64,000 nucleotides of DNA, taken from contig NW_026889750.1 in NCBI RefSeq assembly GCF_033153115.1, forward strand, positions 2,604,001 through 2,668,000. Reading direction: 5' to 3'. The number at the start of each line of letters is the position of its first letter. Position 1 is the stretch's first letter. This DNA is from Saccostrea echinata. Lineage: Eukaryota. The notes below the pieces were generated by a model, which saw nothing but the letters and a program-made list of their open reading frames with translations, was not told the origin of the DNA and ran no database searches. Positions 1,818-5,900 of this stretch are shown piece by piece. The position numbers and the translations under genes are program-made.

Positions 1818-1848
1818 TTAATCTTGTTTCAATTCATAAGAAGCAGGC
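1818..1848 (-). CDS. GPD1: Putative alternative terminal exon of GPD1 giving ...HPEHM-PASYELKQD*
   Basis: Acceptor tttttagtcttctcgtag followed by G CCT GCT TCT TAT GAA TTG AAA CAA GAT TAA; an upstream AG would instead give ILLVGLLLMN*. Confidence 0.4.
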
Positions 1849-2037
1849 CTACGAGAAGACTAAAAAGCATGCAAAGACACAGAAAACAGGGTAGGAATAT
1901 GGATATACATGTATATATAAAAGCCTGCATACCAGCATGCATAAATAATTAATAAATAATGGAGACAAAATAAAACAAATGAATATGAAAGCTGTAGGAT
2001 TGTTAGAAAATATGCATACTTTATACTATTAAGCTTG

Positions 2038-2053
2038 CTATAGATGACATGCA
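2038..2053 (-). CDS. GPD1: Putative alternative terminal exon of GPD1 giving ...HPEH-IACHL* (PTS1 consensus C-H-L)
   Basis: Strong pyrimidine tract ctctctgctgcttttacttttccttttag followed by T GCA TGT CAT CTA TAG. No transcript evidence. Confidence 0.5.
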
Positions 2054-2108
2054 CTAAAAGGAAAAGTAAAAGCAGCAGAGAGTCATTCCCAGAAGCTTGT
2101 AGAAAGAT

Positions 2109-2130
2109 CTAAAGGCGAGGCTTACGCAAC
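2109..2130 (-). CDS. GPD1: Putative alternative terminal exon of GPD1 giving ...HPEHM-LRKPRL* (PTS1-like)
   Basis: Donor CAC AT|GTAAGA overlaps the normal Met-stop (2915 down to 2910); acceptor ttttag at 2131-2132 is followed by G TTG CGT AAG CCT CGC CTT TAG. No transcript evidence. Confidence 0.65.
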
Positions 2131-2911
2131 CTAAAAGTATACATGCATACATTATTACTCTGGATATATCCCTGAAAATAATGCCTAAGTCATTCTTAGT
2201 ACTTGTATATAAATAATATTTCATTCATATCTTACATTAAGAGAGACAACCAATTTTTAGGCAAATTACTTTAAAGGAAATGTGTTTTTATTCCATTTTT
2301 TTTCTCTCAATTTCTTACTATATCCACTGTTTATAAAATATGTTGTAAATGTCAAAATTAAGATTTTTATTTTTATATTATTTCATTTAGGTAAAACTGG
2401 ATTAAATACCTTTGAAAGAAAGAAAATGTATGTGAATTTTAACCTTTTGCTTACTTATATTTGGTTCACATTAAAAGAGTTTAAAATAATAATAGGTAGA
2501 AAAACTTGTCCATTTTTATTGAATAAGTTAGAATAAAGAAAATGCATTTGGGGGGGAAGGGGGTGGGGCGATTTCTAATAATCATTAGTTAGTGCATACA
2601 TAAAAATTGATTGTCTCCAGAGACAAAATTGACAATAGATGTGCATCACTAAACATTTATGAAAAAGTATCACACAACTGTGGACCGATGCCCAAATTGT
2701 CTTCAATATCAATATCTACATGTACATAAAATGATATTTCTCTTAAATGACAATAAAATATACATTGACATTCATAGTACTATATATATATATATTATTA
2801 AAACAACTAAGTCAAAAATATAATACATGTACATGAACCATTCTGATGTTAAGTTTGAATGTCCCAATGAACTGCACGTAAGAAAGGTGCAGTCTGGAGA
2901 CATGGGATATC

Positions 2912-5900
2912 TTACATGTGTTCTGGATGGTTCTTTAAGCAGTCCATGAACTTTTTGGCCTCCAATTTTCCTTTACATATATCGTGTATGGCAGTAAATA
3001 ATGGAAACCTGAACATAAAGCATGAACATTTTGAGCCACTACTTCATACAGAGATAATTTAACTAGTATACATTTATTGCATTTTAAGTGACTTTTCGAC
3101 AACTTTACTACTAGTAATTCAAATCAACACATATATATAACTATAAAATACCTATAAAGTATGAAATTAGCTCTGGATAAATATTAAACAGGGTAAAGTA
3201 GATTTTTTTGTGTTTGGGCGAAAAACAAACACATAGCAAATATGTTTAAAAATTCAATCCCTCAGCATATGGATGTACAGTATTTTTTTTCTGTAGATAA
3301 TAACATTCTATACAAGACTATGATCACCCTAGTAACATTTCTTTTATTTTTTCTTAAATAAAAAAAATTGAAATAGGTATTAAAGTGAAACTAAAAGCAT
3401 TCAACTATCACACAATATTTTCTGTCAAAAAATATGATAAATATAATTTACTGACCTATCTTCCATGTTTTTACTCTTGAGCATGTAATTGACCTCATAA
3501 GCAGTGGGTGGGCCTTGTAACTTCTGACCATTCAGCATCTCAGCTTCTAATGTCTCTATTGACTACAGTGTCAAATAAAATGACATCAAAATATCAACAT
3601 ATCCAGGATTAGTTGCTCTACATGGGGTATGTATTTATAAGTTAACAAATATACTGGGTTCGAATTTGAATATTCATATATACATGTATATTGTGAAAAT
3701 GTACTATTGATTTGAATTTCAAAGTTTTGTATTTCATGCAAATATAAATCTTAACCTTTATGAGCAAAGTGAATATCTAGTCTTGAAAGCCGAAACTTTT
3801 GTGTAAAAAAAAAAGTAGTCAGCTGTATACTTTGAACATTCATTATTAACCAACATTTCTTTTACTTCTCTTTGATGGTCAATTTCATCAAAACGGACAA
3901 TTTTTTTCTTCACTATGATCCTTCAATTTTTTCTTCATTTAATTAAATTGATTGATTATCATAGAAACAAAATAATTGTACCTTTCCAGTAGTTACAAAA
4001 GCCTCGGCTACTTTTCTGTTTCGGCCTCCATAACAAGTGGTGACGAGATCAGCGATTCCACAGCTCTCCAGAAATGTGGATTGATTGGAGTCTAAGAGAG
4101 AACACAAATTTGAATTTAGAATTTTTTTTTTAATATTAACATGTATCTACGTTACATTTATGGTAAATACAGTAAAACACAGTTGTAGATACCAGCCTAT
4201 AATGAATTCGAGCTTACAGTGAAGTGATTTTCATTCCCTGTATTTTGAACACATGTATCATTAACTTATTATTGATATTGAATATAACAAACATACATGT
4301 ATCATTAACTTATTACTGATATTGAATATAACAAATGTACATGTATCATTAACTTTATTATTGATATTGAATATAACAATGTACATGTATCGATAACTTA
4401 TTATTGATATTGAATATAACAACATACATGTATCGATAACTTATTGATATTGAATATAACAAATGTACATGTATCAATAACTTATTATTGATATTGAATA
4501 CAACAGATTATGTCTTTGCATGCTATAAATATGTTGTTTTATTGTAGAGATAAAAAATTGTAGAGGTTTAGTTTTTACACGTAGGACGACCTACATGAAT
4601 ACACATCATAAAAATGTCCTCAGTAAATACTACCTGGATAGAAGACTTCACAGAACTTGATCATTTCCATGAGACCTAATCTAATTACAGCTGCCTTTGT
4701 GTTGTCACCATAGCCCAAACCATCAGCAAAACCAGCTCCTACTGCCACAATGTTCTGTAATCAAACAACACAAGTCATATACTTTTTGTAAAGGTTACAT
4801 AATTTATTTATTCTACAAAAAATAAAAAACTAGAAATCTGACCAGTCAGCAAGGGCCCCACTGAGGGGTAGAAATATAAGGGTGCAAATTAGGGGATGAG
4901 AATTTTACTTGATTACAAAAATTTAAAAATATATAAAGAAGAATAAGCAACAGCAACTGCTAAATATCCAAAAAACCTGTAAATAGTATCCTTGTATTTA
5001 CATATGGCAGTAAAACATATCATATCTATAATAACTCAATTAAATGTATATTTAAAGAAGAATGAAGCATGTGTTTTCTAAAATGCCAGCCTTCAGTGAA
5101 TGCAAATATCACCCACTTGATCTTAACTTCAGGACAAACATCAGTTGCAGACAAAGGTGTTAATTAATCTTAAAGTGACAGAAAGATAACCCTCTAAAAT
5201 TTTCTGCAACCAGCAAGATAATCAATCCCAGGGGATTAATTATACTGCTCTCTCAACCTTTTCTCCTAAGTTTACAATAAGAACTTTTTCAGCAATGACA
5301 GAATGAGATTATTATTTACTTGAATACCTGTTAAAATAAATTGTATTCTTGAATTTACATAAGGCAGAAAAAAAAGAAAGAAAAACCAGAAGTCTCTGAT
5401 GAGACTGTAGCTCTACTGGTTGTATTTATAAAGGAAGATAAAAGTAGCACTTTGACTTGAAACTTTGCAACAGCAATAAACAGAATAATGATCCTTGGTT
5501 TAGTCTCTTTTGTGGCAAGATTAATTATTATATCAGACTAAAACTGTAGGAGGAGTAGCCTTTTAAAACAACTTTACAGAAATTTTGATTTAAGTAACCA
5601 TGGCAACATCATTCAACAAAATCAAAAAACAATAACACCAATTATGTATCTCAGTCTGTAGTCTACTTGTATGCCACATTATACTGAAATCAGACAAAAA
5701 GTGTAGGAGGAGTAACGTTTTCAAAGTATTTCAAGAAAATTTCTACTTTTAGTAACCACGGCAACACCGTTCATTGAAATCCAAAACTGGTACAGAGAAT
5801 TATGTATCTTAGTGTAGTCTAATTGTGTGCTAAGTTATACTAAAATTAGACCAAAACTGTAGGAGGAGTAGCATAATGAAGGTATTTCAAAGAAATTTCT

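What the first reader, a model, noticed from the sequence alone, without database searches (positions are those of the whole stretch)
1818..2917. Hidden cassette of alternative GPD1 C-termini, two carrying peroxisomal (PTS1-like) signals
Seen: the last codons CAC ATG TAA GA contain a strong donor (AT|GTAAGA). 0.8-1.1 kb downstream lie three acceptors within ~300 bp, each followed by a tiny in-frame ORF: -MLRKPRL* (2109-2130), -IACHL* (2038-2053) and -MPASYELKQD* (1818-1848). AATAAA signals occur both between the canonical stop and the cassette (e.g. 2515-2520) and beyond it (819-824). Known: PTS1 is [SAC]-[KRH]-[LM], with P-[KR]-L variants favoured by upstream basic residues. Drosophila Gpdh uses alternative last exons after HPEHM to give tissue-specific tails, and yeast Gpd1 is partly peroxisomal. 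Inference: a splicing/polyadenylation switch may route one NADH-reoxidising enzyme between cytosol and peroxisome, i.e. a peroxisomal glycerol-phosphate shuttle, possibly with two signal strengths. ORF finders cannot see these exons.
Basis: partly seen in the sequence, partly recalled or inferred. Interest (0 to 1): 0.85.

Follow-up and report, generated by a model that had tools for sequence, protein, structure and literature searches.

The report
Oyster GPD1 alternative peroxisome-like tail exon
One of the three proposed mini-exons after the oyster GPD1 stop codon is real, conserved among oysters and already in RefSeq; it adds a six-residue tail ending in a peroxisome-signal-like -PRL, while the other two mini-exons have no support.

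Summary
The window carries a 9-exon GPD1 gene on the minus strand. Its TAA stop overlaps a splice donor (CACAT|GTAAGA).

Mini-exon 1 (2130-2109, tail LRKPRL) is real. All ten coding pieces match RefSeq XP_061173885.1 of Saccostrea echinata exactly, and that model ends HPEHM-LRKPRL. So this exon is not hidden.

Six-residue tails of the same kind are annotated in other oysters:
- Crassostrea gigas, angulata and virginica: SPNPRL.
- Ostrea edulis: SPNPHL, beside a short isoform.
- S. cucullata: LHKHRL.

A 1239-nt Logan contig carries the whole 357-aa reading frame, so it must be spliced. The conserved end, [P/H]-[R/H]-L, fits the broad animal PTS1 consensus but not the strict one.

Many arthropod GPD1 isoforms carry alternative tails at the same point that end in -SKL or -AKL. 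This favours a peroxisomal isoform, but import is untested.

Mini-exons 2 (IACHL) and 3 (MPASYELKQD) appear in no oyster model and remain speculative. Four sense-strand TGCATG motifs do cluster around the cassette.

The parts
2109..12724 (-). [quoted passage not shown] In-frame exon pieces: 12724-12680, 10990-10811, 10098-9958, 9764-9624, 8909-8799, 4754-4635, 4089-3982, 3562-3458, 3007-2915, 2129-2112.
   Evidence: Pfam PF01210 and PF07479 match exon by exon. Splice sites were read from the sequence. Every piece matches P0327 = XP_061173885.1 (Saccostrea echinata) exactly; only the four split codons W16, G171, D249 and R321 are not covered.
2916..3008 (-). Last constitutive coding exon, encoding (R)[30 protein letters not shown] plus the AT of the final Met codon.
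   Evidence: Acceptor ttcag|G at 3009/3008; reading frame; exact match to P0327 residues 322-352.
2910..2917 (-). Overlapping signals. ATG (2917-2915) and TAA (2914-2912) end the short isoform. The same letters form the 5' splice site AT|GTAAGA, with GT at 2915-2914.
   Evidence: The intron-side letters GTAAGA equal those of the exon-4 donor of the same gene. Use of this donor follows from the RefSeq protein ending HPEHM-LRKPRL.
2131..2915 (-). Alternative 785-nt intron. If it is not spliced out, it is the start of the 3' UTR of the short isoform. It holds AATAAA at 2520-2515, 2371-2366 and 2292-2287.
   Evidence: That these are the poly(A) sites of the short isoform is inferred, not shown.
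2109..2130 (-). Mini-exon 1, real. G completes the Met codon, then LRKPRL (2129-2112), then TAG (2111-2109). The acceptor is cttttag|G.
   Evidence: Exact match to residues 353-358 of XP_061173885.1. Homologous six-residue tails: SPNPRL, SPNPHL and LHKHRL in other oysters.
2038..2053 (-). Mini-exon 2, hypothetical. It would give HPEH-IACHL. It follows the strongest pyrimidine tract of the region (18 of 20 Y) and begins with TGCATG.
   Evidence: Sequence only. No such tail appears among the named oyster proteins or the 79 hits to the C-terminal region.
1818..1848 (-). Mini-exon 3, hypothetical. It would give HPEHM-PASYELKQD, which is not PTS1-like. A competing AG 11 nt upstream gives an exon start at 1859.
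   Evidence: Sequence only. No supporting protein was found.
1868..2147 (-). Cluster of four sense-strand TGCATG motifs (Rbfox-type) at 2147-2142, 2053-2048, 1941-1936 and 1873-1868, set among CU-rich tracts.
   Evidence: This is the only place in the 64-kb window with four or more per 300 nt on either strand; the sense strand holds 20 in all. Any regulatory role is inferred.
819..828 (-). Distal poly(A) hexamers ATTAAA/AATAAA. This is a candidate 3' end for transcripts that include the cassette.
   Evidence: Use not shown.

Best explanation
The window holds the cytosolic GPD1 gene of the oyster Saccostrea echinata, or a genome nearly identical to it. The gene has a two-way 3' end.

The last Met codon and the TAA stop overlap a 5' splice site (CAC AT|GTAAGA). 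If that site is not used, translation ends at ...NHPEHM. This gives the 352-aa cytosolic form, probably polyadenylated at one of the AATAAA signals at 2520-2292.

If the site is used, a 785-nt intron is removed. A micro-exon starting at 2130 restores the Met codon and adds LRKPRL plus a stop, giving the 358-aa form.

This switch is conserved across Ostreidae. The tail is always six residues and always ends [P/H]-[R/H]-L. I think it most likely acts as a weak, non-canonical PTS1 that sends a minor share of GPD1 into peroxisomes through PEX5. There the enzyme would run a glycerol-3-phosphate/DHAP redox shuttle, or supply DHAP.

Shown: the gene structure, the spliced isoform, its conservation, and the coexistence of both forms.

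Inferred: PTS1 function, the choice of poly(A) site, and regulation through the four nearby UGCAUG motifs. Mini-exons 2 and 3 are probably not used.
For: All ten coding pieces, including LRKPRL, match XP_061173885.1 exactly.

RefSeq models in other oysters carry six-residue tails after HPEHM:
- C. gigas/angulata XP_011434152.3 and C. virginica XP_022303455.2: SPNPRL.
- O. edulis X1: SPNPHL. O. edulis X2 is the short form.
- S. cucullata: LHKHRL.

The Logan protein P0155 (357 aa) sits on a 1239-nt contig, so that contig is spliced cDNA. The otherwise identical 351-aa form P0333 is on 54 contigs, against 2 for P0155. This suggests the tail form is the minor one.

Other bivalves (Pinctada, Mytilus, scallop, clams) end at HPEHM in the models retrieved.

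PRL, PHL and HRL all fit the broad animal PTS1 pattern [ASCNPHTG]-[RKHQNSL]-[LMIVF] quoted in PMC8919083. PRL and PKL are validated plant PTS1 tripeptides (PMC3427985). Zebrafish Idh1 is listed with a PKL PTS1.

Of 54 distinct non-oyster extended tails after HPEH, 11 end in a strict PTS1 tripeptide (SKL, AKL, AHL or AKM; 0.25 expected) and 10 more fit the broad pattern (2.7 expected). Six tails begin with I instead of M, which shows the same split of the Met codon.

The cassette is single-copy in the genome.
Against: Pro or His at position -3 is outside the strict [SAC][KRH][LM] consensus.

The Crassostrea and Ostrea tails (SPN-PRL, SPN-PHL) lack the basic residues upstream that help weak signals.

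No localisation, PEX5-binding or proteomic data exist for any oyster.

In Drosophila, peroxisomal trafficking of Gpdh1 has not been confirmed, although a variant PTS1 was noted (PMC7477296).

I could not inspect RNA reads. For this species, isoform use therefore rests on the RefSeq model alone.

The contig counts are only a rough proxy for abundance.
Confidence: 0.55

Rival explanations
1. The spliced isoform is real and conserved, but its tail is not a peroxisomal signal. It serves another purpose, such as tissue-specific docking or a change in stability or kinetics. Drosophila isozymes that differ only in their C-terminal tails have distinct tissue roles, for example GPDH-1 in flight muscle.
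For: The tripeptides are non-canonical at -3, and Crassostrea has no basic residues upstream. The Drosophila isozymes arise by alternative splicing and have distinct tissue functions (PMC4708006). Many arthropod tail classes are clearly not PTS1 (MC[ST]FD..., MQTF, MVK...). UGCAUG clusters are typical of muscle- and neuron-regulated exons (the link is from general knowledge).
Against: What is conserved is exactly what a PTS1 needs: an invariant C-terminal Leu, a basic residue at -2, and an allowed residue at -3. The first three tail residues vary freely (SPN, LRK, LHK). Canonical SKL and AKL tails sit at the same point in arthropod GPD1.
Confidence: 0.27
2. All three mini-exons are used as alternative last exons. 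They give two PTS1 strengths (LRKPRL weak, IACHL strong) and a third, non-peroxisomal tail, and the choice may be made through Rbfox sites.
For: CHL fits the strict consensus and follows the best pyrimidine tract of the region. Chance gives such a tail in 0.5-8% of shuffles. A TGCATG lies at or just before each of the three acceptors. Arthropods do have several alternative tail classes per gene.
Against: None of the ten named oyster entries in the 90% cluster has a CHL-like or KQD-like tail, although isoforms of one gene would fall into that cluster and named members are listed first. Nor do any of the 79 hits to the C-terminal region. Acceptor 3 has a competing AG 11 nt upstream. The paralogue on C14 has no such tails. 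The statistics are post hoc.
Confidence: 0.1
3. The spliced form is non-functional splicing noise that annotation pipelines picked up.
For: The donor core GTAA follows automatically from ATG+TAA. The tail form is on far fewer assembled contigs than the short form.
Against: The frame, the six-residue length, the stop and the terminal [R/H]-L are kept across Crassostrea, Saccostrea and Ostrea, while the first three residues drift. In three species' RefSeq it is the only model in this cluster.
Confidence: 0.08

Closest known systems
Drosophila melanogaster Gpdh1 (GPDH-1/-2/-3 isozymes from alternative 3' exons)
   Same: This is the same enzyme, with alternative C-terminal tails added directly after ...HPEHM by alternative splicing at the 3' end (PMC4708006). 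In related Drosophila species one isoform ends ...SPKL and another ...QTL. A 'variant PTS1' at the Gpdh1 C-terminus has been noted, but import is unconfirmed (PMC7477296).
   Different: Oysters show only one verified extra tail. It is six residues long and ends [P/H]-[R/H]-L. Tissue specificity is unknown. Membership of the same ancestral exon system is inferred from the shared intron position, not from exon homology.
[quoted passage not shown]
   Same: A mainly cytosolic redox or glycolytic enzyme gains a C-terminal PTS1 in a minor isoform, giving dual localisation and a peroxisomal NAD+/NADH shuttle (PMC9549241; PMC3372373; PMC8919083).
   Different: Here the mechanism is a splice donor that overlaps the stop codon, plus a micro-exon. 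Readthrough of this TAA gives ...WDIQT, with no PTS1. The signal is non-canonical and its function is untested.
Yeast Gpd1 peroxisomal import and the peroxisomal G3P/DHAP shuttle
   Same: The same enzyme is dually cytosolic and peroxisomal, and it reoxidises peroxisomal NADH (PMC9549241; PMC7829553).
   Different: Yeast uses an N-terminal PTS2 regulated by phosphorylation, not a spliced C-terminal tail.
Mammalian and zebrafish GPD1 in peroxisomes
   Same: GPD1 activity and protein have been reported in mammalian peroxisomes (PMC7829553).
   Different: Vertebrate GPD1 has no PTS and shows no readthrough, so its route in is unknown. Oysters and arthropods appear to solve the problem with an alternative exon.

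Membership tests
[quoted passage not shown] | N-terminal NAD-binding domain (PF01210) and C-terminal domain (PF07479) | tested here: met
   Both families match exon by exon above their curated cut-offs. The exons are identical to RefSeq XP_061173885.1, which is named GPD [NAD(+)], cytoplasmic-like.
PTS1 (strict consensus) | Extreme C-terminal tripeptide [S/A/C]-[K/R/H]-[L/M] | tested here: not met
   The verified tail ends P-R-L. Other oysters have PRL, PHL and HRL. Only the unsupported mini-exon 2 (CHL) meets it.
PTS1 (broad animal consensus) | C-terminal [ASCNPHTG]-[RKHQNSL]-[LMIVF], as quoted in PMC8919083 | tested here: met
   PRL, PHL and HRL all fit. The pattern is loose: about 5.6% of zebrafish proteins match it (2,638 of 46,848). 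The weight therefore lies in conservation across species.
PTS1 | Basic residues upstream (-4 to -6) that help weak tripeptides | tested here: inconclusive
   Present in Saccostrea (L-R-K and L-H-K) and absent in Crassostrea and Ostrea (S-P-N). The rule comes from PMC9542071.
PTS1 | PEX5-dependent import into peroxisomes | not testable with these tools
   This needs localisation or binding experiments. No PEX5 chain was available for complex prediction without joining exons.
Gpdh-type alternative 3' exon system | Splice donor placed in the terminal Met codon after ...HPEH, so that an unspliced transcript stops at once | tested here: met
   CAC AT|GTAAGA. Of the 58 distinct extended tails (54 non-oyster, 4 oyster), 50 begin with M and 6 with I, which fits an AT|N split.
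Gpdh-type alternative 3' exon system | Several mutually exclusive tail exons with tissue-specific use | tested here: inconclusive
   Only one extra tail is backed by annotated proteins.
Rbfox-regulated exon | Clustered (U)GCAUG next to the regulated exon | tested here: met
   Four sense-strand TGCATG lie within 280 nt, which is unique in the window. Their conservation and effect on splicing were not testable.

The most novel reading that the evidence does not exclude
The intron in the terminal Met codon of GPD1 is an old protostome switch that makes a peroxisomal isoform. In Saccostrea it has become a graded cassette: the annotated weak PRL exon, plus an unannotated downstream acceptor at 2053 that gives a strict PTS1 (IACHL). 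The choice between them would be set by Rbfox-type factors bound to the four UGCAUG motifs.
Probability: 0.1. Interest if true: 0.75.

Novelty: new member of a known kind. Interest (0 to 1): 0.45.

Why it matters
How animal GPD1 reaches peroxisomes is an open question. Activity and protein are found in mammalian peroxisomes, yet the protein has no targeting signal and shows no readthrough (PMC7829553, PMC8919083).

Oysters, and more clearly many arthropods, carry an alternative micro-exon after ...HPEHM whose product ends in a PTS1 or a PTS1-like tripeptide. If these tails work, protostomes build a peroxisomal glycerol-3-phosphate/DHAP shuttle by splicing. That is easy to test with tail fusions.

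It would also link GPD1 to peroxisomal NADH reoxidation. From general knowledge, it could link it to DHAP supply for ether-lipid synthesis too, and bivalves are rich in plasmalogens.

For annotation, the locus shows a stop codon that doubles as a splice donor.

Tried and rejected

Searches that found nothing useful:
- The 43-aa last-exon frame found no candidates, because it is too short for the word index.
- The representative search with exon 2 gave mostly fragments and no full-length mollusc protein.
- Alignments A2 and A3 were too scattered to use as queries.
- The metagenome scan with P0327 found no oyster sequence; the best hit was 67% identical.
- A findings look-up by words was blank.

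Ideas rejected:
- Stop-codon readthrough as a source of a PTS1: the readthrough peptide ends ...WDIQT.
- Repeat or transposon origin of the cassette: it is single-copy.
- A parallel cassette in the paralogue on C14: no PTS1-like tails lie within 4 kb of its stop.
- My own first count of TGCATG wrongly treated the motif as a palindrome. It was corrected.

The spliced protein model was never joined or typed. The exons were searched only as separate rows, by reference, in an alignment with two database scaffolds (A1). Exact-sequence look-ups of hypothetical isoforms were therefore left out.
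Full report
**What is in the sequence**

On the minus strand the window carries a GPD1 gene. The Pfam families PF01210 and PF07479 match exon by exon. Reading the open frames and splice sites gives nine coding exons from the ATG at 12724 to ...NHPEHM at 2917-2915.

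CAC ATG TAA GA lies at 2920-2910, so the stop TAA (2914-2912) overlaps a donor AT|GTAAGA. Its intron side equals the exon-4 donor of the same gene.

Three AGs downstream are each followed by a short in-frame tail:
- Exon start 2130 gives M-LRKPRL.
- Exon start 2053 gives I-ACHL.
- Exon start 1848 gives M-PASYELKQD.

AATAAA lies at 2520, 2371 and 2292, and again at 824. There are several ATTAAA in between.

**Chance**

The 2.2 kb after the stop holds 90 AG sites. I made dinucleotide-preserving shuffles of that stretch. At least one strict [SAC][KRH][LM] tail behind a usable acceptor arose in 4-8% of shuffles, and in 0.5% when a strong pyrimidine tract was required. At least two loose tails arose in 0.3% or fewer. 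Of 110 real-sequence control stretches from the window, 2% reached either level. The pattern is therefore uncommon, but the test is post hoc and cannot show that the sites are used.

**The decisive result**

I aligned them as separate rows, by reference, with two database GPD proteins (A1) and searched with that profile.

The best hit of normal GPD1 length was P0155. It has 357 aa and comes from Logan only. Its longest contig is 1239 nt, and it ends ...NHPEHM-SPNPRL. A 1239-nt contig that holds a complete 357-aa frame of a gene spanning more than 10 kb must be spliced cDNA.

Its 90% cluster contains these RefSeq models (sequences):

| Species | Accession | Length | Tail after HPEHM |
|---|---|---|---|
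| Crassostrea gigas / angulata | XP_011434152.3 | 357 aa | SPNPRL |
| C. virginica | XP_022303455.2 | 357 aa | SPNPRL |
| Ostrea edulis, isoform X1 | XP_048728395.2 | 357 aa | SPNPHL |
| Ostrea edulis, isoform X2 | XP_048728396.2 | 351 aa | none |
| Saccostrea cucullata | XP_062575445.1 | 358 aa | LHKHRL |
| S. echinata | XP_061173885.1 | 358 aa | LRKPRL |

All nine exon translations of the window, plus the six codons 2129-2112, match the S. echinata protein exactly. Only the four split codons are left uncovered.

So the window is S. echinata or a genome nearly identical to it. The junction 2916->2130 is part of the public gene model. Mini-exon 1 is real and not hidden.

**Both forms exist**

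O. edulis has both isoforms annotated. In one Crassostrea species the short 351-aa form (P0333) is on 54 Logan contigs, while the otherwise identical 357-aa form (P0155) is on 2. This suggests, roughly, that the tail form is the minor one.

Pinctada, Mytilus, scallop, Tegillarca, Mya, Dreissena and Ruditapes models end at HPEHM. As far as these data go, the tail is an oyster (Ostreidae) feature.

**What the tail is likely to do**

Across oysters the first three tail residues vary (SPN, LRK, LHK). The length of six, the stop, the terminal Leu and a basic residue at -2 are kept, and -3 is Pro or His. That is the conservation pattern expected of a PTS1.

The tripeptides fail the strict consensus. 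They fit the broad animal pattern [ASCNPHTG]-[RKHQNSL]-[LMIVF] used in PMC8919083. PRL and PKL are validated plant PTS1s (PMC3427985). Zebrafish Idh1 is listed with PKL.

Independent support comes from other protostomes. Among the proteins fetched there were 54 distinct non-oyster tails extending beyond HPEH. Of these, 11 end in a strict PTS1 tripeptide, against 0.25 expected, and 10 more fit the broad pattern, against 2.7 expected. Examples:
- Homarus isoform X3: ...SLMSKL.
- Scylla: ...ITLKSKL.
- Daphnia: ...ADSRAKL.
- Beetles: ...SKL.
- Lutzomyia: ...IAKL.
- Drosophila species: ...SPKL.

Six tails start with I rather than M. That is what an AT|N split of the Met codon predicts, so the intron position is shared. 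An unidentified eukaryote in a JGI contig has HPEH-...DSRL.

**Literature**

Reviews state that GPD1 is found in mammalian peroxisomes, that it has no PTS, and that it makes none by readthrough (PMC7829553; PMC8919083). Yeast Gpd1 uses a PTS2 (PMC9549241).

Drosophila Gpdh1 has three splice isozymes with distinct tissue roles (PMC4708006). [quoted passage not shown] I found no paper on an oyster GPD1 tail isoform.

**Mini-exons 2 and 3**

None of the ten named oyster entries in the cluster has a CHL-like or KQD-like end. Named members are listed first, and an isoform differing only in its tail would fall into the same cluster. None of the 79 hits to the C-terminal region has such an end either.

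Acceptor 3 has a competing AG 11 nt upstream. The paralogue on contig C14 ends HPEHL and has no PTS1-like tails within 4 kb.

In favour of mini-exon 2 there is only sequence:
- It has the strongest pyrimidine tract of the region.
- It ends in a strict CHL.
- A TGCATG lies exactly at its start.

I put its use at about 10%.

**Regulatory hints**

Four sense-strand TGCATG motifs lie at 2147-2142, 2053-2048, 1941-1936 and 1873-1868. This is the only place in the window with four or more per 300 nt on either strand; the sense strand has 20 in 64 kb. This confirms the separate first-stage note s1-817991. One motif sits 12 nt before the real acceptor. Rbfox-type control is a reasonable inference but is untested.

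The cassette is single-copy in the genome. Readthrough of the TAA gives no PTS1.

**Limits**

- The spliced model was not joined, so exact look-ups of hypothetical isoforms were left out.
- The N stretches were left untouched.
- Nothing in the work looked human.

**Verdict**

One of the three exons is a genuine, conserved and already annotated alternative last coding exon. The peroxisomal reading is plausible and gains comparative support, but it is unproven. The 'hidden three-exon cassette with two signal strengths' is not supported.

The locus is a new member of a known kind: Gpdh-type alternative tails, and a cryptic PTS1 made by splicing. Its interest is moderate.

Noticed in passing
L010:5978-6267 (G000:C14, about 20775477-20775766, + strand): The GPD1 paralogue on contig C14 ends ...NHPEHL-TAA. 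Its last codons, the stop and the start of its 3' UTR form a 96-bp tandem repeat of 3.0 copies at 94% identity, so NHPEHL+stop occurs three times.
   Followed up: partly
L004:280-1200 (intron of the C14 paralogue): A long minisatellite of units of about 21-22 bp (…cccaggtaatgtctagtgtgt…) starts right at the donor of the exon that ends ...MFIPG. The donor-like GGTAATG is therefore repeated dozens of times.
   Followed up: no
proteins P0188, P0204, P0212, P0218, P0271, P0273, P0315, P0299, P0209, P0296, P0195; locus L014: Many arthropod and unidentified eukaryote GPD1 isoforms carry tails after HPEH(M/I) that end in a canonical PTS1 (SKL, AKL, AHL, AKM, SRL). Other recurrent tail classes are MC[ST]FD..H.. 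in crustaceans, MQTF/MQTL in Diptera, and MVK.... I found no paper that describes this pattern across taxa.
   Followed up: partly
protein P0119 (358 aa, unnamed): A divergent GPD without the HPEHM end terminates in -CKL, a strict PTS1 tripeptide encoded directly rather than through an alternative tail.
   Followed up: no
window 5724-6903, minus strand (GPD1 intron 5): A run of near-identical open frames of about 51 aa ([34 protein letters not shown]...) points to a tandem repeat of about 156 bp inside the 4-kb intron.
   Followed up: no
window 247-600, minus strand: A 107-117 aa open frame contains a duplicated ...EKIFKEIMHFHY... motif just beyond the distal poly(A) hexamer. It looks like a repeat element rather than a gene.
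   Followed up: no
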